Shown here piece by piece: positions 4,549-43,097 of a DNA stretch of 64,000 nt (position 1 is the first letter of the stretch; each line of letters begins with the position of its first letter). Position numbers and translations under genes: made by a program. Where the stretch lies: positions 171,834-235,833 of IMG/VR virus record IMGVR_UViG_3300024259_000010; one strand, written 5' to 3'. Below the pieces are notes generated by a model. That model was not told the DNA's origin, did no database searches, and saw nothing but the letters and a program-made list of their open reading frames with translations.

Positions 4549-7500
4549 ATGAGGAAGTATTTAAATAAAGCCTTACTGACATCTATTATGTTTATTAGCA
4601 TGATGAGCAGTAATGGTTATGGGCAAACACCATATACAGATGGTATGCCTATTACAGATATTGCAAATAAACAACCTATGAGTATTATATCTGGTAAGAT
4701 TAATTATGGTTGGGATCAACTATATAACTTATCTCAAGGACAAGGAGCATCCGGTCTAAGAATCGATGCATTGGAAGCTCAAACAAATTACTGGAACTCG
4801 GTGTCTAATAATGTGACACAGAATTATGAAGCTGCTGATACATTATTAGATAATTCTAAACTTAATATCACTAATGGTGTATTTGTTACATCACTGAGTT
4901 CTACTGATGGTAGTGAGGTAGTTAGTTTATCCCCAAGTGAGGTATCTGTATTTAACGGAACTAGTGGAAGTAAACTAACAGACTTAGATATATCTATTAC
5001 TGATGGTAGTGATAGAGCATCATTGACTCCAGGTACTCTCGCTTTAGATAATTTATTTATATTACAAACAACTTCTAGTAAATTAGAAGTAAGTAAAAAT
5101 GATCCAAACTATACCACACAGATTAATGGTGATGTGCAGATTAGTAAAGGTGATGCTTCTCTAGATTCATTAACAATGGGATATTGGACTATCAATAATT
5201 GGTATGACATTATAGGACCAATACCGCTGCAATATACTATTGAAAGAGGTATATGGGCAGGTCAAGTATTATATTGGACAGCTACTACTCAGGGGAGACC
5301 AACCTATAATAATAATGATGTAACATTATACTGGGATGGGGAAAAGTGGAGACTGACCGACAATGGAGCGATTTATTATGTATGTACTTCCAACACACAA
5401 CATCCACCATGGGACCATGAATGGAATGCAGTACCATCAGGTTTAACATATAATCCTACAACAAGTCCTTTACTCACACGGCAATTAAACTCTAAACAGG
5501 AGATGATGAATGTTGTAGACAGTAAAGTAGATATGTTAAATGGTACTGCTACTAATCTAACTGTCGATACATTATTAACAGCAGACGATGTTATTATAAC
5601 TGAAAGTGCTCTTATTGACGGTGTAGATATAAAAGATTATGCAGTGTATATTGAAGATGATCCTGAGAACTGGGCGAAGTTAACAAGTGAAAAACTACGA
5701 ATAGATTCAGTTATTGAAGAATGGGAACTTCCAACTGAAACCAATCGGATGGATCTGACATCAAGTGGTATTGGGATAGATGATTATACGAATGATAAAC
5801 ATGCTTCTTTTAACCCAAGTGCGGTAACCTTTGGTACGACTACTGATTCCGCTACTTTATCAGCATCCCACCTAGCATTGGGACACAATGATACTTCTGT
5901 AGAATCAGATGGTACTGATGTAATGATAGGTAATACATACATAGATACTATAATCAAAGCTAATAGTTTGGTTGATATACAAGCAAGTGTTGATATCATG
6001 GATGATCTTACTGTAGACGACCGATCATACTTCTATGGTACTGTAAATTTCAAAGATACTGTATGGTTAACCGATGGTGATAATGGTGGTCAAGTATGGA
6101 TGCAAGATACTAGAGTTACTCTGGTCGATGTTGCATTTACTACATCCGATGGATTATGTACGTTCGTTGTTCCTGATCATGGGTTAAATAATAACAATAA
6201 TACAGATGTAGCTATATTAGCTAGTAATCAAAATGATCTACCAATTGGTGTTCAATACGTTATTGATGTCTTGGATAACAATACGTTTACAGTTCCTGCT
6301 GGTGCTGGTGCTGATGGATTAGGTGGTACTGCTGATATAAATGAAGATGGTAAAACAGCATATGTATATAATTCATGGACTGACAGACATAGTTTTAACA
6401 GCCCTGTAACATTCGACGTAAATCATCAGGTGACTATGGAAGGACCTGTTGTTATTGCTGAAGCAACACTCGATGATCTCTATGTAAAAGGTAGTACTTA
6501 TCTCAATTCCGATAGAGGTACTGGTAATGTAATATTACGAGGCCAAAGTGTTGTGTTAGATAATCAAGCATTTACTTCTGGAATGGGTGATGATATCCTA
6601 GTTGCAAAAACAGACCATGGATTAATTAGTGGTGACAATGTCAATGTTACATTGTCAAGTAATACTGGAGATCTACCAAATGGTGCATATGGTGTGTATG
6701 TACTCAATGACAATATGTTTATGGTAGACTCTGGTGGTGTTATCAATGGTGAAGGTGGTACAGCAACTTTCACTGAACAAGATTCAACTCCATATCAATA
6801 TGTTAATGCCTATGATAAACATTACTTTTATAGTGAAGTGGATTTTTCAGAACCAGTTACTATTAGTGAAGTGGATTTTTCAGAACCAGTTACTATTAGT
6901 GAAGGGACACTTGGCAATATTACATTAAGTGATGATATAGATGCTGCTGAATATAATATTGAAAATGTTGATGATATGGATGTCACTACGGTTTCAGTAG
7001 ATGGCTATACTGTTGCAGATATCGATTCATTTGATTTACTATTAGGTAATTCTTCTTTGGGGACTAAGATTGATTCAAATAGCTCTGGTATTGAAATGGA
7101 TCATAATGTTAAAATGAATTTCCAACTTAATGTGGCAGGTAAATCAACATTTAATTATCTCAATGGATATAATGATTTCAAAATTAGAAACTATACTTCG
7201 GATGAAGTAGATGCACCATTCACATCTGTTGTAGGTAATACAGTAACATTTAATTATTATCACGGTTTGCAGAATGGTGATCAAATTCGTATTCAGAATT
7301 CATCTGCTGAAAATGAACTACCAAATGGATACTACAACATATCTCGAATAGATAGTAGTACCTTTACCGTTGATGCTGGCCAGCCTGGTACTGGAGCAGC
7401 TGGTACTGCAGATGTAGCAGAAGAAAGTAAAGATGTACTTTTCTACGATGTAGGTGATGATGAATTCACATTCAATAGTCCCGTATCATTTGGATATGGT

Positions 7501-24532: not shown

Positions 24533-24540
24533 TATATTAC
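24533..24540 (+). promoter_or_regulatory. Early promoter TATATTAC
   Basis: Exact motif directly after the terminator. Confidence 0.7.
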
Positions 24541-24625
24541 TTATAAGAGAGCATTAACACATTAAATTTTAATACAAATAAGACATGATATACACTAATA
24601 ATCATAATATTAAGGAGTAGAATAT

Positions 24626-32320: not shown

Positions 32321-32328
32321 TATATTAC
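32321..32328 (+). promoter_or_regulatory. Early promoter TATATTAC
   Basis: Exact motif upstream of the PicA candidate. Confidence 0.7.
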
Positions 32329-32397
32329 ATTAATGTGAGCAAGTTGAAAAACCTCTACTCGCATTAATTTAAATTTATAAAAGAAAGGGATTATAAA

Positions 32398-37022: not shown

Positions 37023-39104
37023 ATGGATGATAATGTAATAGCAGATCCACGATCTATTGCTGATACAAATATTAAACCAGAGGTGATTGGTCTTGAGAAT
37101 CTTCTTAGTCCACTCTGTCAGTTCAACTCATCACAACGTGCAGATATGTTTAGTTCAAATATTTCACAAGCGTTAGTGGTAGATGGATGCGAACCACCAA
37201 GATTAGGATCTGGATTCGAACAGATGATTGGAGATTATTACTTCGATCCAACGCGTCGTAAATCAGAAGCTCAGTTAATTGATGTGATACCAAAATTCGA
37301 AATAGGATTTAGTAGTTCTCATATTTCAGAGTGTCCTAGTAAGACTGTAATACTTTTAACACCAGAAGGTATTGATTGTATTGAGATTAAGAATCATGAA
37401 CAATTATATTCAGGGTTTGGTTACAAGAACAAAATATCACCAGATGCAATTTATCTTAATACGGATGAAGGATCTTTTATTCCTAAAGATATGAAATTTG
37501 CAGAACCACCTAATCACATTGAAGGCGTACATTGTTTAGGCGTTAATGCTCAAGTAGCATATATGGCTATCCCACATGTTGTTCAGGATGCAATTGTTAT
37601 TGGTGAAAGTTATGCTAAAAAGAATGGTCACTTAGGTGTCCATACTGTTAAAGTCTCATTAGATGAAAATGATATTCCAATCAATCTCTATGGAACTGAA
37701 ATAGATCCTAAGATATTTCCAGACATTGGCCAGCAGGTTAATGAAGAAGGTATCTTAATGGCTATCCGAGAAAGCTCGGCATCGTCATTTGCAGATCTTA
37801 CAGAAGCAGCACTTAACCATGTTCAGTTTACAACTGATAAGATTATTAAAGCACCAGCAGGTGCCACTGTTATGGATGTCAAAGTATTCAGCTCAGCTAT
37901 TGCATATAGAAAGCTTGCTGATAATCCTGGTATGATGTCTCAGGTTATTAAATACCAATCACATTATTACAATTACTATAAGCGTATTATCGATTGTTAT
38001 AACAAGATTAAAAATGATGGGCATAAATTAACTCCACGTTTCAATGATCTAGTAACACGAGCAATGTGTTTGAAGAAACCAGCAAACTCAAAAGAGAAAC
38101 TACCACTGATTGATAAACGTGTACCTGTAGGACATTTCGTATTAGAAATTACTTATGGTTATACACGCAATGTATCAAATGGTTTTAAATTTGCTGGACG
38201 TTCTGGTAACAAAGGTGTTATCTCAATTATCTGGCCTGATGAACATATGCCAGTTGATGAACAAGGTATTAGAGCTGATATGATTGTCTCTCCTGAGTCA
38301 GTTGTAAACAGATTGAATCCATCACAGTTATATGAACAGTTCTATAATAGAATGGGTGACTTAATGGCACAGCGAGTTCGTAATGATGAATTCGGTTCCA
38401 TGACAAATACATACAATACTGTCATAAGTTTTCTTAAGGATATTCGTCAAGAGTATGCGAGAGAGATAGATGAGCTATGTGATACTCCAGCAAAGAAGCA
38501 GGCATTAATCGATGATATCAAAGAAGATGGTTTTTATCTGATTATACCCCCATTCTGTAAGGATGTTACATTGTTAAATTGTAAGAATCTAGCGGCTAAG
38601 TACAACTATGTTGAATCACCTGTAACTTACTCGTATCGACAACAAGACGGTACATTGAAAACTGTTACAACTAAGTTTGATCATTGCATTGGATCTATCT
38701 ATATGTACATACTTGGTAAGATACCACAGATGCAGGCTTCTGCATTAGAGATATCGTACATTAATCAATTCGGGTTACCGATTAAAGCAAAGTCAAAGGA
38801 ACTGAAACTACAACATCTGTATACAGCTACACCATTACGTTTTGGTGAAGATGAAGTCAGTATGTTTATTATGGATCTACCTCCTGAAAACATTGCAAGA
38901 TTCTTGGGTATACGTGCTACATGCACATCAGCCACAGAAAAGATGAATCGTGAATTGTTAACGGTCAAACGACCATCTGCTATTAAGCACATTAAGATGT
39001 CTACTAGAGAGATCGTGAAGAATAGTGTTGTGAGTAAGATCTTTAATCATTACATGGGTGTTATAGGATTCGATACAAGCGAAACCTCATCTGGTCGTAA
39101 ATAA
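37023..39104 (+). CDS. Non-virion RNA polymerase beta subunit, C-terminal part (phiKZ gp71-73-like)
   Basis: NSSQRADMFSSNISQA, GVNAQVAYM...QDAIVI, GFKFAGRSGNKGVIS, RADMIVSPESVVNRLNPSQLYEQ, G.IYMY.L.K and PLRFGEDE. Confidence 0.88.
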   Translation: MDDNVIADPRSIADTNIKPEVIGLENLLSPLCQFNSSQRADMFSSNISQALVVDGCEPPRLGSGFEQMIGDYYFDPTRRKSEAQLIDVIPKFEIGFSSSHISECPSKTVILLTPEGIDCIEIKNHEQLYSGFGYKNKISPDAIYLNTDEGSFIPKDMKFAEPPNHIEGVHCLGVNAQVAYMAIPHVVQDAIVIGESYAKKNGHLGVHTVKVSLDENDIPINLYGTEIDPKIFPDIGQQVNEEGILMAIRESSASSFADLTEAALNHVQFTTDKIIKAPAGATVMDVKVFSSAIAYRKLADNPGMMSQVIKYQSHYYNYYKRIIDCYNKIKNDGHKLTPRFNDLVTRAMCLKKPANSKEKLPLIDKRVPVGHFVLEITYGYTRNVSNGFKFAGRSGNKGVISIIWPDEHMPVDEQGIRADMIVSPESVVNRLNPSQLYEQFYNRMGDLMAQRVRNDEFGSMTNTYNTVISFLKDIRQEYAREIDELCDTPAKKQALIDDIKEDGFYLIIPPFCKDVTLLNCKNLAAKYNYVESPVTYSYRQQDGTLKTVTTKFDHCIGSIYMYILGKIPQMQASALEISYINQFGLPIKAKSKELKLQHLYTATPLRFGEDEVSMFIMDLPPENIARFLGIRATCTSATEKMNRELLTVKRPSAIKHIKMSTREIVKNSVVSKIFNHYMGVIGFDTSETSSGRK

Positions 39105-39122
39105 CATTAAGTAAAGGAACAT

Positions 39123-41003
39123 ATGAATAGACAAATAATAACAACTGCTATGTTATCCAATATGGAATACTTAGTGGAAAATGTTAGCAAGCCTAATGTT
39201 ATGATTGACCTACAGTTGGATGATGGTAATAAAATAAAACTATCATCTACTAATGCTATACTACATGGTATTTTATGGATACCTTATTATAGACTAGGTC
39301 GTAATATAACTATTAATGAAATATACCCAATCAAGAACGTGACACCAGAAACGGTCAGTGAAGTACAAACTATTCAATATAGGCATTTGATGGAAGAAGT
39401 CGATATGCCTTACATGGACATTGTGAAGTTATTATGGGATACTGTGATAACCTTATATAAATTCGTTCATGCAAACTTGGGTGAGTACTCCAGATCTATT
39501 AGTTTAATGTCACTAATTCATGTAACTGATAACCCAGCTGTTAAGAAGATTATTGAAACTGACATACCGAGTGAACTTGGTACTAAGGTGGCAGAGATTC
39601 GATTCAATGAGTTATCTAAAGAATTACTTGATGTACTTGAAGACCCTAAAGCAATACCTAATAATCCCATGTTACCATTCATGGATTCAGGTGTGTTTAA
39701 TCGTAATCAGCTACCACAGTTAATGATGGCATATGGAGCACGGTCAGATCTAGATGATCAGATGCAGAAACATGTCATTAATGAATCATCACTGAGTGGA
39801 TTGAAAACAGTCAAAGATTATGCGACAGAAGCATTGAGTGCTAAGAAAACATCATTCTACTTGAAAGATGTTATTAGCAAGACTCAGTACTTTGCTCGTG
39901 TACTTCGATTGAATAATATGCAATTCAGAAAGAAGTATAAAGGTGATTGTGGTAGTACATATGTGGCTCCAATAACAATAGCTACAGGTACTGGTAAGAA
40001 CTTTGTTGATAAAGTGGTGTTCCACCATGGTAAGAAAGTAATCATAACTAAGAATAACTATAAAGAACTAGAGGGACATCGTGTTGAAATGATATCACCT
40101 CTTGGTTGTAAATATCATGATGGTATTTGTGAAAGATGTGCAGGGCGTGCTACAACTAAGCCTTGGGCATTTATGCCAGATATTCATCTAGGTAATTATT
40201 CTAAGTCGAAGCTATGTGCTAAAATATCGCAGAAGGTATTGAGTGCAAAGCATCTTATCAAAACAACTTCAATTGAACCTAAGTTATTTGATTGTGCAAA
40301 ACGATATCTATGTAAGAAATCTGGCAGTACGAATATTATATTCTGTAAAACTGTTAATAGAAGTCTTAAGAATATCGCAGTCGTAGTTCCATATGAAAGT
40401 ATGAAACATATCGGTGATTTGCATTATGGTCAAACTGCTGAGAGCTTTAGTCTGTTGGAACAGATTGCATTTAAGAATACTGCAACTGAACAAATGGATG
40501 AGATTAAGCTTGGTGAACCACAGTTCATGCTGCACTTCTCAGAAGAAATGTTAGAACATATCAAAACTGTATATCCAGATATCGAATTGGTAGATGGTAA
40601 TTATGAGATTCCTATGAAAGGATTTAAAGCAAGTGATCCGTTCATTTCTTATGTCGTAATTAATGATGATATGGTAGCATTCTCTGATCGTGTGAAGAAC
40701 ATGATTAGTAACAACATGGCAAGTTATAATTCAGCATCATCTGCATTGATTGATCTGGCTAATATCATCTATACTAAGACAAACCTAAATATATTCTTTA
40801 TTGAATTAGTAGTTAAGTCTTTGATGAGTAGACCTATCACATGTGATACAGATGTAGACTTCTCGAAATTACGTGAAGGAATCATTGACTCAAGTGTTGC
40901 ATCTAAATTAGCACATGAAGATATTCGTAGATACTTACAACAAGCATCTACTTGTGTCGTTCCAAAAGGTGATAGTCCTATTGACATCTTCTTTGGGTTC
41001 TAA
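39123..41003 (+). CDS. Non-virion RNA polymerase beta' subunit, C-terminal part (phiKZ gp74-like)
   Basis: QLPQLMMAYGARSD, bridge-helix-like ALSAKK...TQYFAR, Zn site DCGS...SPLGC...GICERCAG and trigger-loop-like SQKVLSAKH. Confidence 0.85.
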   Translation: MNRQIITTAMLSNMEYLVENVSKPNVMIDLQLDDGNKIKLSSTNAILHGILWIPYYRLGRNITINEIYPIKNVTPETVSEVQTIQYRHLMEEVDMPYMDIVKLLWDTVITLYKFVHANLGEYSRSISLMSLIHVTDNPAVKKIIETDIPSELGTKVAEIRFNELSKELLDVLEDPKAIPNNPMLPFMDSGVFNRNQLPQLMMAYGARSDLDDQMQKHVINESSLSGLKTVKDYATEALSAKKTSFYLKDVISKTQYFARVLRLNNMQFRKKYKGDCGSTYVAPITIATGTGKNFVDKVVFHHGKKVIITKNNYKELEGHRVEMISPLGCKYHDGICERCAGRATTKPWAFMPDIHLGNYSKSKLCAKISQKVLSAKHLIKTTSIEPKLFDCAKRYLCKKSGSTNIIFCKTVNRSLKNIAVVVPYESMKHIGDLHYGQTAESFSLLEQIAFKNTATEQMDEIKLGEPQFMLHFSEEMLEHIKTVYPDIELVDGNYEIPMKGFKASDPFISYVVINDDMVAFSDRVKNMISNNMASYNSASSALIDLANIIYTKTNLNIFFIELVVKSLMSRPITCDTDVDFSKLREGIIDSSVASKLAHEDIRRYLQQASTCVVPKGDSPIDIFFGF

Positions 41004-41122: not shown

Positions 41123-41632
41123 ATGAGATATCCAACAAATAAAAATAATGAGTTTAAAATACATCTCAAAGAACTTGGGTTTAAGTCATATAAAGATGTG
41201 GCATTAGCTGCAGGGACTACAGCACCATTGATCAAGGCTATTCTATCCATCGGTCCAAGTGATAGATTTGTGTTGAACCGAGCAGCACATGCATTAGCCA
41301 CGGTTGGTGTAGACATTAGCATCCTGGGTTATGAATCTCCTGAGAAATTGGAAGATATAGATGGGCTTATGTTTGATGCACCACAAAGCGATTACAACTT
41401 CTTCGATTCTATCTACGACAATGAACGTAGAGAAGTAGTCTTGGAAATGCTTGCAACTCTGACAGAGCGGAAGGCCGCGATCCTATATGACATATATTTT
41501 GAAGGTTCTACTTTTACCAGTATAGCCAGCAAGTACGGTGTCACAAAAAACAGGATAAAGCAAATCCACGACAGAGCTTTAAGGGCTATGCGGCACATAA
41601 CACGTGCAAGAATGTTACAGCAAGTTTATTAA
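41123..41632 (+). CDS. HTH protein with C-terminal sigma-70 region-4-like domain
   Basis: N-terminal XRE-like SYKDVALAAGTTAPLIKAIL. C-terminal LTERKAAILYDIYFEGSTFTSIASKYGVTKNRIKQIHDRALRAMR fits the sigma region-4 consensus. Confidence 0.72.
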   Translation: MRYPTNKNNEFKIHLKELGFKSYKDVALAAGTTAPLIKAILSIGPSDRFVLNRAAHALATVGVDISILGYESPEKLEDIDGLMFDAPQSDYNFFDSIYDNERREVVLEMLATLTERKAAILYDIYFEGSTFTSIASKYGVTKNRIKQIHDRALRAMRHITRARMLQQVY

Positions 41633-41645
41633 AAAGGAGAATAGA

Positions 41646-42062
41646 ATGAAGATTGTAAAAGACTCACATATGGATCACGGTCTGTGTGATGAAATAATTG
41701 CGGAGATCACGGAAAAGTTTGCAGACAAGGATGGTTTCTTTATTGAAACATTCGAAGCTGTATCAGGAGAAGCACCCTGTGGGCTCTACGGGCCTATTGT
41801 TGGTGATGCCCCGGTTGATGAGAGGGATGTGTATTATACCAAACGCGGGGATCGTGAATATGATTCACGTATGGTTAAACTCCCTATGCGTATGACCAAT
41901 ACAATTACAGTTATTGCAGGTCCTCATGAGGATGATGCATGTGTATTGTATACAGCGTATGCTGGACCTCAGGCTCCAATGGAACCAGGTGATCCGAAAC
42001 AGAATGCTGCTGAGGTTGAAGACAATAAAGTCTTCTGGGCTAAGCACGCACTCTGTGAATAA
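41646..42062 (+). CDS. Conserved uncharacterised phage protein
   Basis: Start at ATG 41646 behind AAGGAG; GLYGP..GDAPV...RG.R...SR.V...TVIAGP...LYTAY.GP.AP.EP pattern. Confidence 0.7.
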   Translation: MKIVKDSHMDHGLCDEIIAEITEKFADKDGFFIETFEAVSGEAPCGLYGPIVGDAPVDERDVYYTKRGDREYDSRMVKLPMRMTNTITVIAGPHEDDACVLYTAYAGPQAPMEPGDPKQNAAEVEDNKVFWAKHALCE

Positions 42063-42077
42063 TAACCCTTAACTAAA

Positions 42078-42102
42078 GAAAGAACCTTCGGGTTCTTTTT
42101 TT
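42078..42102 (+). terminator. Intrinsic terminator (UUCG loop)
   Basis: AAAGAACC-TTCG-GGTTCTTTTTTT. Confidence 0.88.
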
Positions 42103-42125
42103 TGAAGTTCAATATATTTCAGGTA

Positions 42126-42133
42126 TATATTAC
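42126..42133 (+). promoter_or_regulatory. Early promoter TATATTAC driving a tRNA-like RNA
   Basis: Exact motif 6 nt upstream of the tRNA-like element. Confidence 0.7.
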
Positions 42134-42138
42134 TTATA

Positions 42139-42210
42139 TGATAAGTAGCTCAGCAGGTCAGAGCATTCGGATCTCCGAAAGGTTACGGGTTCGAGTCCCG
42201 TCAATATCAA
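42139..42210 (+). ncRNA. tRNA-like RNA or tRNA pseudogene lacking a complete anticodon loop
   Basis: T8A9, D-arm GCTC-AGCAGGTCA-GAGC, anticodon stem TTCGG/CCGAA with only a 4-nt loop (ATCT), variable AGGTT, canonical T-arm ACGGG-TTCGAGT-CCCGT, imperfect acceptor stem TGATAAG/CAATATCA, no encoded CCA. Confidence 0.8.
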
Positions 42211-42245
42211 ACTACATTTTTTTGTATATCATTTATATTCAAGTA

Positions 42246-42253
42246 TATATTAC
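42246..42253 (+). promoter_or_regulatory. Early promoter TATATTAC
   Basis: Exact motif plus AAACTATTTTAAATAAAAAGGAG leader. Confidence 0.75.
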
Positions 42254-42293: not shown

Positions 42294-43097
42294 ATGGAAA
42301 ATGAAATTAAGATTGCAAATACCAATGTTGTGATAAATGATGATCATGTCCTGGTTGATATGAAAGATGGTACAAAATTGGTAGTGCCAAACACTATGTT
42401 GAATGAGAAGTTTCTATCATTAGAAACATTGACCGTAGTACCACACTTGTTTACTGCATCTAATGATTTTATTTTAGATGAAATCAATAATGACCCGAAG
42501 GCTGTCATATTTGCATGTAGAGATTTTATGCTAGACGACCTCATGGAAAGTGGTACGTTACCTACAATTATTGAAGTCAAGGAAGATGACGCAATTGTGG
42601 AAGCATTTAATGGTGTATTGAATCAGACTTTACCAGATTGGTGGAAATCAGATCATGATGATCATGGTCAATATCTTTCCGACACTGATGAGGTAAAGGA
42701 TTCTCTCACCGAGTACAATGGAACCGGGTTCGGATTATATGTTACATCATACATTGATGGATGTTGGAGATTCCGATTAAAACAGAATCATATTGAAAAA
42801 GATATATCTATTGCTCCAGATATTGAAGAACTTAGGACACTAGTTATAAGTGTTGCTAAGTTATTCGATATTGAGCTTGGTAATGTGTTTTCATGTGATG
42901 ATCCAAATCTAGTGGCATACGCTACTGCATACCTTAAGAGTTATATACCTATGGTGTATAAAGATAAGAATGTATTTGGTGGTGTTATGTGGGCATTGTT
43001 AAATCTCGATGCTTATGAAGTACAAACTGCATACCAACATATTGAATGTGATGGAGGAATGCCATTTAATGTATTGGCGTTTGATACTGATTATTAA
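42294..43097 (+). CDS. Acidic early hypothetical protein
   Basis: Early promoter and RBS; no recognised motif. Confidence 0.75.
   Translation: MENEIKIANTNVVINDDHVLVDMKDGTKLVVPNTMLNEKFLSLETLTVVPHLFTASNDFILDEINNDPKAVIFACRDFMLDDLMESGTLPTIIEVKEDDAIVEAFNGVLNQTLPDWWKSDHDDHGQYLSDTDEVKDSLTEYNGTGFGLYVTSYIDGCWRFRLKQNHIEKDISIAPDIEELRTLVISVAKLFDIELGNVFSCDDPNLVAYATAYLKSYIPMVYKDKNVFGGVMWALLNLDAYEVQTAYQHIECDGGMPFNVLAFDTDY

What the first reader, a model, noticed from the sequence alone, without database searches (positions are those of the whole stretch)
42126..42210. Anticodon-less tRNA-like RNA starting right at its own early promoter
Seen: canonical D-arm and T-arm (GGTTCGAGTCC) and a perfect 5-bp anticodon stem, but the loop is 4 nt (ATCT) instead of 7, as if exactly the anticodon triplet were removed. 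The acceptor stem is partly mismatched and there is no CCA. It sits alone between a UUCG terminator and the next promoter, with an intact TATATTAC 6 nt upstream, so transcription would start at about its 5' end. Established: hosts deploy anticodon nucleases (PrrC, PARIS AriB, retron-linked PtuAB) and phage tRNAs can counter them. Inference: it could be an uncleavable tRNA mimic or decoy for anti-phage nucleases or uncharged-tRNA sensors, or just a decaying tRNA gene.
Basis: partly seen in the sequence, partly recalled or inferred. Interest (0 to 1): 0.68.

Follow-up and report, generated by a model that had tools for sequence, protein, structure and literature searches.

The report
Phage tRNA look-alike without an anticodon
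A marine giant phage carries its own small gene for an RNA that folds like a tRNA but cannot read codons; a related phage keeps the same fold through compensating mutations, so it is probably a working tRNA mimic, not a dead tRNA gene.

Summary
Window 42140-42209 (+) matches Rfam tRNA at 43.1 bits (cut-off 29). Its D arm, T arm and 5-bp anticodon stem are perfect and the tertiary nucleotides are canonical. The loop is 4 nt (AUCU), the acceptor helix is weak and there is no CCA. ARAGORN rejects it.

It lies 6 nt after a TATATTAC motif that occurs 56 times on the + strand and 8 on the - strand, typical of jumbo-phage early promoters.

Two other assemblies reproduce the 4-nt loop exactly.

A related marine phage contig (L409) has the same module: promoter, tRNA-like RNA, then an identical 16-nt tail. 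All 16 scored pairs are kept, three by compensatory double changes, although the element is only 66% identical. Its anticodon arm is 18 nt against 14 nt here, so neither can form a 7-nt loop.

This is a conserved, non-decoding tRNA-shaped RNA gene, not a pseudogene or artefact. Transcription and function are inferred. The best guess is a mimic that occupies a tRNA-recognising protein.

A pattern survey found similar short-anticodon-arm cloverleafs in many viral contigs. In bacteria, 58 of 80 tetraloop-capped hits lie in loci with RtcR, SPFH or RtcB homologs.

The parts
41123..41632 (+). Gene for a 169-aa protein with a sigma-70 region 4 helix-turn-helix domain. It is the first gene of the module shared with the relative.
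   Evidence: Pfam Sigma70_r4, E = 3.2e-13. The same gene precedes the element in L280 and L409, with 59% amino-acid identity.
41646..42062 (+). Gene for a 138-aa protein of unknown function, immediately upstream of the element.
   Evidence: The gene callers give 138 aa. The homolog P0030 in L280 is 85% identical and is followed by the same terminator, promoter and tRNA-like element. AlphaFold pLDDT is 95.5, but the only fold matches are uncharacterised proteins. More distant homologs occur without any tRNA-like neighbour.
42079..42103 (+). Intrinsic-terminator-like hairpin (AAAGAACC-TTCG-GGTTCTTT) running into T8. It closes the upstream operon.
   Evidence: It is nearly identical in L280 and L409.
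42096..42133 (+). Early-promoter module: T-run, GAAGTTCA, a 14-nt spacer, then the extended -10-like GTATATATTAC (TATATTAC at 42126-42133).
   Evidence: TATATTAC occurs 56 times on the + strand and 8 on the - strand of the genome. Most copies are intergenic and share one extended consensus. The layout fits the published description of jumbo-phage virion-RNAP early promoters: an AT-rich ~10-nt motif centred near -10 with a T-rich element upstream (PMC7598289; PMC8244752). The region is 88% identical in L409.
42134..42140 (+). Initial region TTATATG. The G at 42140 is the predicted transcription start and position 1 of the tRNA-like RNA.
   Evidence: Across promoters of this genome, A-T-(A)-G is conserved at +5 to +8 after TAC. 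G42140 is the first base of the Rfam alignment. In both phages this G pairs with a C to close the acceptor helix. The start site is inferred, not measured.
42140..42209 (+). tRNA-like RNA of 70 nt: weak acceptor helix, canonical D arm, 5-bp anticodon stem capped by AUCU, 5-nt variable loop, canonical T arm, A73, no CCA.
   Evidence: RF00005 at 43.1 bits. The minimum-free-energy fold is a cloverleaf. ARAGORN is negative. The homolog at L409:1091-1164 scores 44.0 bits, with 16 of 16 scored pairs kept and 3 compensatory changes.
42171..42174 (+). 4-nt loop (AUCU) in place of the 7-nt anticodon loop.
   Evidence: Three assemblies agree. The relative has GUUAAUUC, read as 5 bp + 8 nt or 6 bp + 6 nt.
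42208..42223 (+). Conserved 3' tail C-AAACUACA-U7 directly after the closing G:C pair. It is the likely 3' end or terminator tract of the unit.
   Evidence: The tail is 16 of 16 identical between window and L409, although the cloverleaf itself is 66% identical. Similarity drops to 54% right after the T-run and the next genes differ.
42224..42253 (+). Next early-promoter module (GTATATCA ... TATATTAC at 42246-42253), serving the orphan gene at 42294-43097.
   Evidence: The 267-aa product has no relative other than itself in the 5.8-billion-protein word search.

Best explanation
The locus is a small stand-alone gene of a marine phiKZ-type jumbo phage. An early promoter starts transcription at or next to G42140. 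The product is an RNA of roughly 70-85 nt that folds into the tRNA L-shape: D arm, T arm, elbow nucleotides and a 5-bp anticodon stem. Its anticodon loop is replaced by a short cap, its acceptor helix is weak and AU-rich, and it ends in a conserved AAACUACA-U7 tail instead of CCA. It therefore cannot decode and is unlikely to be charged as made.

The most likely mode of action is molecular mimicry. Made at the onset of infection, the RNA would occupy a protein that recognises the tRNA body, without offering a cleavable anticodon loop or a CCA end. The candidate I favour is a host tRNA-targeting nuclease or tRNA-damage pathway. tRNA-processing enzymes are an alternative.

Shown: the sequence and fold, the promoter motif, conservation of the module, and compensatory changes in a relative.

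Inferred: transcription, RNA ends, the partner, and any decoy effect.
For: 1. The tRNA core is intact. RF00005 scores 43.1 bits. All 14 pairs of the D, anticodon and T stems are Watson-Crick, and U8, A14, G18G19, G46, U54U55C56, A58 and G53-C61 are present.

2. It has its own transcription unit. A full-consensus early-promoter module ends 6 nt before the RNA, and the conserved ATG of the initiation region supplies position 1 (literature).

3. The structure is under selection. In L409 the element is only 66% identical, yet 7 of 28 stem nucleotides differ without breaking a pair. Three pairs show double compensatory changes (29-41, 50-64, 51-63) and one shows a G-C to G-U change. Register-shifted controls give 31-55% pairing and no compensatory change. 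Neighbouring genes differ at 29% and 60% of third codon positions.

4. Non-decoding is the conserved state. The anticodon arm is 14 nt here and 18 nt in the relative, and neither can give a 7-nt loop.

5. The module has boundaries. The promoter is 88% identical and the tail 100% identical, then homology ends and the downstream genes differ.

6. It is not coding. The ATG-initiated frames differ between the two phages, and L409's frame stops after 12 codons (read).

7. There are precedents. Other viral contigs hold cloverleafs with a 5-bp stem and 4-nt cap; one gut-phage lineage shows 14 of 21 pairs with compensatory changes. In bacteria, 58 of 80 such tetraloop-capped hits lie in loci with RtcR, SPFH or RtcB homologs. 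For the Y-RNA tRNA-like domain, a role as competitive inhibitor of an anticodon nuclease has been proposed (PMC7790460).
Against: - There is no expression data. No RNA run holds this DNA. The start site and the 3' end are inferred from motifs.
- Only two lineages carry the element, so the covariation rests on one comparison. With two sequences the shuffle control has little power (67 of 500 shuffles reach the observed value).
- More distant relatives, at 26-62% RNAP identity, have no such element in the syntenic region or in the whole records that were searched.
- No partner protein was identified. The flanking proteins are uninformative.
- There is no canonical terminator hairpin between the cloverleaf and the T-run. 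Read-through into the next gene, and hence a cis role, is possible.
- The acceptor helix is poor in both phages, which would weaken recognition by enzymes that measure the acceptor-T stack.
- Decoy action needs high RNA levels, and these are unknown.
Confidence: 0.45

Rival explanations
1. It is a cis-acting RNA module, not a free small RNA. The upstream of two tandem early promoters would make a leader that reads through the T-run into the downstream gene. The tRNA-like fold would then serve as a 5' stabiliser, an RNase P/RNase Z processing signal, or a terminator or insulator between transcription units.
For: There is no separate G+C-rich hairpin between the cloverleaf and the T7 run. The T-run is also the T-rich upstream element of the next promoter. 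The distal UAUCAU at 42228-42233 can compete as partner for the 5' strand in a longer fold. tRNA-like processing signals are an established principle (own knowledge: tRNA punctuation, MALAT1-mascRNA).
Against: The downstream gene has its own full promoter 120 nt later. In L409 the downstream gene is unrelated, while the cloverleaf and its tail are conserved, so the element is not tied to a particular mRNA. The upstream operon already has a strong terminator.
Confidence: 0.2
2. It is a decaying tRNA gene that lost its anticodon loop, its acceptor pairing and its CCA, and is drifting.
For: Three function-critical features are defective at once. The three bona fide tRNAs of the same genome (Met-CAT, Arg-TCT, Leu-TAA) have perfect acceptors and encoded CCA. 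More distant relatives lack the element. The folding-energy z-score is modest, -1.6 to -1.9.
Against: Stem changes between the two lineages are all pair-preserving, three of them double compensatory, while 34% of alignment columns differ. The lesions avoid the structural core and the tertiary nucleotides in both lineages. The promoter and the 16-nt tail are conserved. Both lineages have a non-7-nt loop of different length. Under the pseudogene reading that would need independent indels confined to the loop.
Confidence: 0.12
3. It is a base-pairing or Hfq-type small RNA. The working part is the invariant single-stranded tail AAACUACA-U7, and the tRNA-like body only provides stability or nuclease resistance.
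For: The tail is the most conserved part, 16 of 16 identical against 66% for the body. AACUACA is complementary to TGTAGTT, the core of the promoter-upstream element GTAGTTCA that recurs in this genome. In the relative L005 that element sits in palindromes CTGTAGTTC-N3-GAACTACAG next to promoters.
Against: The complementarity was found post hoc. I estimate chance at about 0.04 after allowing for the comparisons made. AACTACA is not otherwise unusual in the genome: 28 copies on the + strand and 39 on the - strand. The tail conservation could instead reflect a DNA-level regulatory half-site or a termination signal. It does not explain why the elbow nucleotides are kept.
Confidence: 0.1
4. It is a tRNA-like RNA that is matured (3' trimming, CCA addition) and charged by a synthetase that ignores the anticodon, for a non-decoding use of the aminoacyl group.
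For: M. smegmatis YrlA undergoes RNase P cleavage in vitro and CCA addition (PMC4201824). In L409 the predicted first base forms a G(-1):C73-like pair, reminiscent of the tRNA-His identity element (own knowledge).
Against: There is no G3:U70, no long variable arm and no consistent G-1:C73 in the window copy. The acceptor helices have internal mismatches. The phage has no CCA-adding enzyme. The tail is conserved, not disposable.
Confidence: 0.04
5. It is an assembly or sequencing artefact, or a tiny protein-coding gene starting at ATG 42138.
For: The data are metagenomic. An ATG-initiated 45-codon frame is open across the element.
Against: Three assemblies are identical at 14.9x depth. The relative's ATG frame is shifted by a 2-nt indel and stops after 12 codons. 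No ribosome-binding site can precede an ATG that lies 4 nt after the promoter motif.
Confidence: 0.01

Closest known systems
tRNA-like domain of bacterial Y RNAs (YrlA, Rfam RF02553; D. radiodurans Yrn1)
   Same: These are non-coding RNAs that reproduce the tRNA D arm, T arm and tertiary contacts, lack a decoding anticodon loop and lack a free CCA. Yrn1 is modelled with a 5-bp 'anticodon' stem and a 6-nt loop. YrlA is modified by tRNA enzymes. A role as competitive inhibitor of an anticodon nuclease has been proposed (PMC4201824; PMC7790460).
   Different: YrlA is circularly permuted relative to tRNA. It carries a Ro60-binding stem with the GNCGAAN0-1G motif and is encoded next to rsr (TROVE). 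Here the order is the standard tRNA order, there is no Ro60-type stem, RF02553 reaches only 17.4 bits against a cut-off of 69, and the phage has no TROVE or RtcB gene.
Tandem tetraloop-capped tRNA-like genes in RtcR / SPFH / RtcB operons of Proteobacteria
   Same: They have the standard-order cloverleaf, canonical D and T arms, and a 4-6-bp anticodon stem capped by 4 nt. Rfam calls them tRNA and ARAGORN calls them 'tRNA-???'.
   Different: They are chromosomal, sit behind a sigma-54-type promoter divergent from rtcR, and come in pairs. Their caps are mostly GNRA, and many have good acceptors and CCA. 58 of 80 lie in loci with Rtc homologs. The phage element stands alone, has an AUCU cap, and has no Rtc neighbour.
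Phage tRNAs that counter tRNA-cleaving defence (T5 tRNA-Lys against PARIS; anticodon-loop variants in mycobacteriophages)
   Same: They are phage-encoded tRNA-shaped RNAs that matter in conflicts over host tRNA cleavage (PMC11464382 and PMC10264068, listed).
   Different: Those are real, chargeable, decoding tRNAs that replace the cleaved host tRNA and have 7-nt loops. This RNA cannot decode, so it could act only by binding, not by substitution. The eLife paper mentions no loop-length variants or decoys.
tmRNA tRNA-like domain, plant-virus 3' tRNA-like structures, gammaherpesvirus vtRNAs, mascRNA (own knowledge)
   Same: They are tRNA mimics without a functional anticodon that engage the tRNA machinery.
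   Different: tmRNA and the plant-virus structures end in CCA and are aminoacylated. The vtRNAs and mascRNA are eukaryotic and are made by RNase P/Z processing. None is a bacteriophage early-promoter unit that starts at position 1.
'tRNA-???' / 'tRNA-OTHER' / pseudo-tRNA calls in phage genome annotation
   Same: ARAGORN labels the relative's copy 'tRNA-???' with a 2-nt anticodon, as it does many survey hits.
   Different: This is an annotation bin, not a biological family. It mixes suppressors, pseudogenes and elements like this one. For example, Myrna's tRNA-OTHER is a normal-length suppressor tRNA.

Membership tests
Canonical tRNA (Rfam RF00005) | Covariance-model score above the gathering threshold | tested here: met
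   43.1 bits against 29 for the window copy; 44.0 bits for L409.
Canonical tRNA (Rfam RF00005) | 7-nt anticodon loop with U33 and purine 37 | tested here: not met
   The loop is AUCU, 4 nt. The relative's arm is 18 nt, giving a 6- or 8-nt loop. ARAGORN finds none in the window and calls the relative 'tRNA-???'.
Canonical tRNA (Rfam RF00005) | 7-bp acceptor stem and a 3' CCA, encoded or added | tested here: not met
   The window helix has 4-5 pairs, an internal loop, then 1 pair. L409's helix has a 2x2 internal mismatch. No CCA is encoded; AAACUACA-U7 follows instead. CCA addition after processing cannot be tested here. The three real tRNAs of this genome all encode CCA.
Canonical tRNA (Rfam RF00005) | D arm, T arm and the tertiary-interaction nucleotides of the L-shape | tested here: met
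   U8, A9, A14, G15, G18G19, A21, G22/G46, U54U55C56, A58 and G53-C61 are present in both copies. Position 48 is U here and C in L409.
YrlA / bacterial Y RNA (RF02553) | Match to the family model | tested here: not met
   17.4 bits, E = 0.65, against a gathering score of 69.
YrlA / bacterial Y RNA (RF02553) | Encoded near a Ro60 (TROVE) gene, often with RtcB | tested here: not met
   PF05731 and PF01139 are absent from the 235.8-kb genome, which is estimated 91% complete. The positive controls rang.
YrlA / bacterial Y RNA (RF02553) | Permuted domain order with a Ro60-binding stem and the GNCGAAN0-1G motif | tested here: not met
   The order is the standard tRNA order and no such motif occurs in 42134-42225 (definition from PMC4201824).
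Rtc-operon tetraloop-capped tRNA-likes (defined here) | Cloverleaf whose anticodon stem is capped by 4 nt, with D-to-T spacing 3 nt short | tested here: met
   The window copy fits the survey pattern GCTCAG-N6-AGAGC-N23-GGTTCGA. The relative L409 does not: its arm is 18 nt.
Rtc-operon tetraloop-capped tRNA-likes (defined here) | Location between rtcR and SPFH/rtcB, in tandem pairs, behind a sigma-54 promoter | tested here: not met
   The element is a single copy in a phage, behind a phage promoter. The genome has no RtcB. None of the 116 viral survey hits has Rtc neighbours.
Jumbo-phage early (virion RNAP) transcription unit | Conserved AT-rich ~10-nt motif centred near -10, with a T-rich element upstream, repeated before many genes on one strand | tested here: met
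   56 + and 8 - copies share one extended consensus, including copies before the RNAP subunit gene at 37023. The definition comes from PMC7598289 and PMC8244752. Use by a virion RNAP, and early timing, cannot be tested with these tools.
Counter-defence tRNA decoy (functional class) | Binds and inhibits a tRNA-targeting nuclease, or rescues infection from one | not testable with these tools
   No host, no culture and no RNA data are available. The only support is by analogy.

The most novel reading that the evidence does not exclude
Anticodon-loop-less cloverleaf RNAs form a widespread functional class that is now filed as 'tRNA-???' or pseudo-tRNA. Phages would make them from early promoters, and bacteria would make them inside RtcR-controlled RNA-repair operons. 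In both settings they would act as uncleavable stand-ins for tRNA that bind, titrate or report on tRNA-cleaving immune nucleases. The element in this window would be the phage-offence version of what the Rtc-operon copies do for the cell.
Probability: 0.2. Interest if true: 0.85.

Novelty: new variant of a known kind. Interest (0 to 1): 0.64.

Why it matters
tRNA cleavage is emerging as a major arm of bacterial immunity: PrrC, RloC, PARIS, retron-linked PtuAB, Cas12a3 and Schlafen-like nucleases.

The known phage answers are repair enzymes and replacement tRNAs. A conserved phage RNA that keeps the tRNA body but has neither a cleavable loop nor a CCA end would be a third strategy, namely titration by a mimic.

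The hypothesis is easy to test, because the RNA is about 70 nt and can be expressed from a plasmid against cloned defence systems.

The side observation may matter as much. Many bacteria place tetraloop-capped tRNA look-alikes directly in front of SPFH-RtcB under RtcR control. That could explain what such mimics do in RNA-repair operons.

It also bears on annotation. Cloverleafs with odd anticodon loops are currently discarded as pseudogenes or as 'undetermined' tRNAs.

Tried and rejected
**Searches for relatives**
- No nucleotide or protein relatives of the flanks exist among cultured phages. The RNAP beta' subunit is at most 24% identical over a near-full-length match to any known chimallivirus-type phage.
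- Single-protein scans of IMG/VR with both flanking genes found nothing.
- An exact 22-mer of the element and a promoter-to-cloverleaf junction pattern found nothing in IMG/VR.
- RNAP-based relatives at 50-62% identity (L005-L009) have no tRNA-like sequence near the RNAP genes.
- Relatives at 26-35% identity (whole records G001-G010) hold only ordinary tRNAs, plus a few with long inserts.
- The whole 230-kb contig behind L007 could not be searched.
- The metagenome scan GAGCATTCGG-N3-8-CCGAAAGG returned only ordinary 7-nt-loop tRNAs of many isotypes and chance hits. That anticodon stem sequence is generic.
- More distant homologs of the 138-aa upstream protein lie in other contexts without the element.

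**Reads**
- Runs X2-X4 hold the phage only at about 2-3x depth and do not cover the element, so reads give no independent-sample confirmation.

**Ancestral isotype**
- The best blastn matches are phage tRNA-Met genes at 77% identity, too weak to name an ancestor.

**Partner hunt**
- Pfam, PHROGs, the Atlas search and fold search on the neighbours were uninformative.
- The genome contains no PolyA_pol/CCA-adding enzyme, RNA_ligase, RtcB or TROVE family. T4 Rnl1 also gave no hit, but that model rang in no control genome, so its absence is not shown.

**Cultured example of the class**
- Myrna's 'tRNA-OTHER' turned out to be an ordinary suppressor tRNA, and the Vibrio phage D479 hit lies on an annotated 73-nt tRNA in a tRNA array.

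**Other readings and limits**
- The small-ORF reading was rejected because the frame is not conserved.
- Literature searches for phage-encoded anticodon-less tRNA-likes found none in the held library.
- The large representative protein search, complex prediction and alternative genetic codes were not used, as nothing called for them.
Full report
**Where the window comes from**

The window is bases 171834-235833 of a 235,833-bp IMG/VR virus record that CheckV rates 91% complete. The record encodes split multisubunit RNA-polymerase beta and beta' genes (window 37023-41003). Their closest cultured relatives are phiKZ-type jumbo phages, at about 24% identity or less over near-full-length matches. 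Public runs that hold the sequence are seawater metagenomes. The host is unknown.

**Checking the observation**

- TATATTAC lies at 42126-42133, six bases before G42140.
- The D arm is GCTC-AGCAGGTCA-GAGC.
- The anticodon stem is a perfect TTCGG/CCGAA helix closed by only four bases, ATCT (42171-42174).
- The variable loop has 5 nt.
- The T arm is ACGGG-TTCGAGT-CCCGT.
- The acceptor helix has four to five AU-rich pairs, an A/AA internal loop and one G-C pair.
- A73 is followed by AACTACATTTTTTT, so there is no CCA.

Rfam's tRNA model scores 42140-42209 at 43.1 bits against a gathering score of 29, with E = 8e-6 for the whole window. The minimum-free-energy fold is the cloverleaf. ARAGORN finds no tRNA anywhere in the window.

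The same genome has three ordinary tRNAs: Met-CAT, Arg-TCT and Leu-TAA. All have clean acceptors and an encoded CCA.

The 4-nt loop is not an assembler's slip. A Logan contig of the probable source run (depth 14.9) and a 236,983-bp ENA assembly are identical across the element. Lower-depth runs from other samples do not cover it.

**The promoter**

TATATTAC occurs 56 times on the + strand of the genome and 8 times on the - strand. About 30 intergenic copies share one extended consensus. It consists of:

- a T-run;
- GTAGTTCA;
- about 14 nt of spacer;
- (g/a)TATATATTAC;
- after four bases, a conserved A-T-(A)-G;
- an AT-rich leader of about 35 nt with a ribosome-binding site.

[quoted passage not shown] The copy at 42096-42133 matches the consensus at all informative positions.

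The G of its ATG is G42140, which is position 1 of the Rfam alignment. The inference is that the RNA is made with its 5' end already in place and needs no RNase P cut. This is inference from motifs. I found no RNA data.

**The decisive comparison**

Most searches for relatives failed; they are listed under tried and rejected. The 138-aa protein encoded just upstream did have an 85%-identical homolog on a 1,130-bp marine contig, L280. The helix-turn-helix protein of that contig then led to a longer contig, L409, of 1,331 bp.

L409 carries the same module:

- the helix-turn-helix gene;
- the 138/144-aa gene;
- the same terminator;
- CATATATTAC-TTATATG;
- a tRNA-like RNA at 1091-1164, scoring 44.0 bits with RF00005 and labelled 'tRNA-???' with a two-base anticodon by ARAGORN;
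- the tail C-AAACTACATTTTTTT.

The two cloverleafs are only 66% identical, 50 of 76 alignment columns with eight gap columns. Yet all 16 scored pairs are kept in both:

- Pair 29-41 changes from C-G to G-C.
- Pair 50-64 changes from C-G to U-A.
- Pair 51-63 changes from G-C to A-U.
- Pair 10-25 changes from G-C to G-U.

Seven of 28 stem nucleotides differ and none breaks a pair. With the 3' partners slid by one to three columns, pairing falls to 31-55% and no compensatory change appears.

The background divergence is substantial. Third codon positions of the two neighbouring genes are 71% and 40% identical.

By contrast, the promoter region is 88% identical and the 16-nt tail is 100% identical. 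After the T-run, similarity falls to 54% and the next genes are unrelated. The unit therefore has conserved boundaries: promoter, cloverleaf, tail.

The relative's anticodon arm is TTGGG-GTTAATTC-CCCAA. It is 18 nt long, read either as 5 bp with an 8-nt loop or as 6 bp with a 6-nt loop. The window's arm is 14 nt. A symmetric stem on an even-length arm cannot leave a 7-nt loop. The shared state of this family is therefore 'no decoding loop', with the loop free to vary in length and sequence.

In both copies the predicted first base, the G of ATG, pairs with a C to close the acceptor helix, and the invariant tail follows immediately.

The ATG-initiated reading frames differ because of a 2-nt indel, and L409's frame stops after 12 codons. 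The conserved object is therefore an RNA fold, not a peptide.

**What this rules in and out**

A long-decayed pseudogene is hard to reconcile with compensatory changes, untouched tertiary nucleotides, and a conserved promoter and tail.

AUCU is not what remains of a Y-U-NNN-R-N loop, and the relative's arm is longer than normal, not shorter.

What remains is a conserved, non-decoding, tRNA-shaped RNA with its own early promoter.

**Mechanism**

The parts that are kept are the elbow (G18G19 with U55C56), the D and T stems, the 5-bp anticodon stem and the tail. The parts that are dispensable or degraded are those needed for decoding and charging. That pattern fits an RNA whose job is to be recognised as a tRNA body.

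I could not identify the partner. The neighbours are a sigma-70 region-4 HTH protein, a 138-aa protein with a confident but uninformative fold, and an orphan protein. The genome lacks CCA-adding, Rnl2-type RNA-ligase (Pfam RNA_ligase), RtcB and Ro60 families. A search for T4 Rnl1 was also negative, but that model hit none of the control genomes, so it shows nothing.

The element lies in a variable insert. Relatives L005 and L007 run from the RNAP genes through a small ORF to the next large gene, which aligns with the window's helicase gene by position and size.

I rank the readings as follows:

- A free early small RNA acting as a tRNA mimic or competitor, most plausibly against a host tRNA-targeting nuclease or tRNA-damage pathway: 0.45.
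- A cis-acting leader, processing or terminator module: 0.2. This stays open because no separate terminator hairpin precedes the T-run, and that T-run doubles as the upstream element of the next promoter.
- A pseudogene: 0.12.
- A tail-driven base-pairing RNA: 0.1.
- A chargeable tRNA-like RNA: 0.04.

**Context from two surveys**

Both surveys are side results and were only partly followed up.

The first used a pattern that demands canonical D- and T-arm sequences with a spacing 3 nt too short for a class I tRNA.

- Among 75 distinct cores, 24 have a 5-bp anticodon stem with a 4-nt cap at the canonical position. Six of those caps are GNRA, where 0.75 would be expected.
- ARAGORN labels many of them 'tRNA-???'. 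Many sit inside phage tRNA arrays and some are duplicated.
- In one lineage of related viral contigs, most of them from one metagenome (3300045988), the element is syntenic. 14 of 21 pairs show compensatory changes, the anticodon arm is always 14 nt, and a U-run directly follows a long acceptor helix.

- There, 53 of 116 cores have the 5-bp stem and 4-nt loop design. Caps are dominated by GAAA, GCAA and GCGA.
- 58 of 80 tetraloop-type hits lie in 8-kb loci that also encode RtcR, an SPFH/Band-7 protein or RtcB. Only 7 of 42 hits of other architectures do.
- The layout is rtcR, then a divergent sigma-54-type promoter, two tandem tRNA-likes, SPFH and rtcB.
- Rfam knows them only as tRNA.
- They differ from the permuted YrlA Y RNAs found in Ro60-containing versions of the same operon.
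- For YrlA, Hughes et al. suggested that the tRNA-like domain, which the anticodon nuclease does not cut, may competitively inhibit that nuclease.

These precedents make a mimic role for the phage RNA plausible. They do not show it.

**Comparison with known systems and novelty**

The element passes the tRNA covariance model. It fails the features that define a working tRNA: a 7-nt loop, a 7-bp acceptor and a CCA end. It fails every defining feature of YrlA that was tested (model score, Ro60 neighbour, permuted order). It shares the fold design of the Rtc-operon tRNA-likes but not their context.

Known phage counter-measures to tRNA cleavage are repair enzymes and replacement tRNAs with altered 7-nt loops (papers listed). 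In the held library I found no description of a phage-encoded, promoter-proximal, anticodon-less tRNA mimic. That is a limited search, and Burroughs and Aravind 2016 was not checked.

I rate it a new variant of a known kind, tRNA mimics.

**Limits**

- Only two lineages carry the element.
- There is no transcript evidence.
- There is no host and no partner.

Noticed in passing
IMG/VR loci L010-L125 (e.g. L015:6960-7033, L024:3695-3764, L112, L118): At least 116 viral contigs hold cloverleafs with canonical D and T arms but an anticodon region 3 nt too short. 24 distinct cores have a 5-bp stem with a 4-nt cap, and 6 of those caps are GNRA. ARAGORN calls many of them 'tRNA-???'. Many sit in phage tRNA arrays, and some are tandem duplicates (L024/L085, L036/L116).
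   Followed up: partly
L011:6693-6782, L014:8447-8536, L022:3889-3978, L067:1101-1191, L114:5280-5368, L109:2604-2693 (alignment A4): This is a syntenic tRNA-like element in a lineage of related viral contigs, most from one metagenome (3300045988). Its anticodon arm is 14 nt and its acceptor helix is long and imperfect, running straight into a U-tract. 14 of 21 pairs show compensatory changes. Its neighbours are PHROG families of unknown function (DUF6353 and others).
   Followed up: partly
Bacterial loci L289-L408 (e.g. L405:5037-5180, L334:1066-1203, L315:3494-3555): Two tandem tRNA-like genes, the first capped by a tetraloop (mostly GNRA), lie between a divergent rtcR and SPFH-rtcB, behind a sigma-54-type promoter, in Xanthomonadales, Burkholderiales and Alphaproteobacteria. 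58 of 80 tetraloop-type hits lie in loci with Rtc homologs. Rfam labels them only as tRNA. I did not find them described in the held library.
   Followed up: partly
window 42208-42223; L409:1164-1179; L005:5400-5600: The 16-nt tail C-AAACTACA-T7 is identical in both phages. AACTACA is the reverse complement of TGTAGTT, the core of the promoter-upstream element GTAGTTCA. In the 62%-RNAP relative L005, promoters are preceded by palindromes CTGTAGTTC-N3-GAACTACAG. This may be a protein-binding half-site, a termination signal or chance.
   Followed up: partly
whole genome; window copies at 5058, 14210, 23419, 24533, 26788, 29340, 32321, 36966, 41078, 42126, 42246, 45336, 58684, 59111: The promoter family has a very regular extended consensus and a conserved A-T-(A)-G 5-8 nt after TAC, reminiscent of the TATG start motif of phiKZ late promoters. 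The strand bias is 56 to 8.
   Followed up: partly
window 24533-24600 and 32321-32390: Two full promoter motifs have no ribosome-binding site or start codon within about 60 nt. They could drive further non-coding RNAs or long leaders.
   Followed up: no
L149, L150 and L152 (records G003, G002, G001; about 124-133 nt each): These tRNA-model hits carry roughly 50-60 extra nucleotides between the D and T arms, lie next to ordinary tRNAs in distantly related jumbo-phage records, and are not called by ARAGORN. They could be intron-containing tRNAs or another kind of tRNA-like RNA.
   Followed up: no
window 41646-42062: The 138-aa protein has invariant H8, D10 and H11 and a very confident predicted fold (pLDDT 95.5). 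Its only weak structural neighbours are uncharacterised apicomplexan proteins (4fbd, 2pd0). It is widespread in phage contigs, in varied contexts.
   Followed up: partly
window 42294-43097: The 267-aa protein has no relative other than itself in the 5.8-billion-protein word search, and its Atlas model has low confidence. At the same position the relative L409 has an unrelated gene.
   Followed up: partly
L005:6303-8588: In the 62%-RNAP relative, the large gene downstream of the RNAP genes, at the position of the window's helicase gene, carries a weak intein-splicing domain hit.
   Followed up: no
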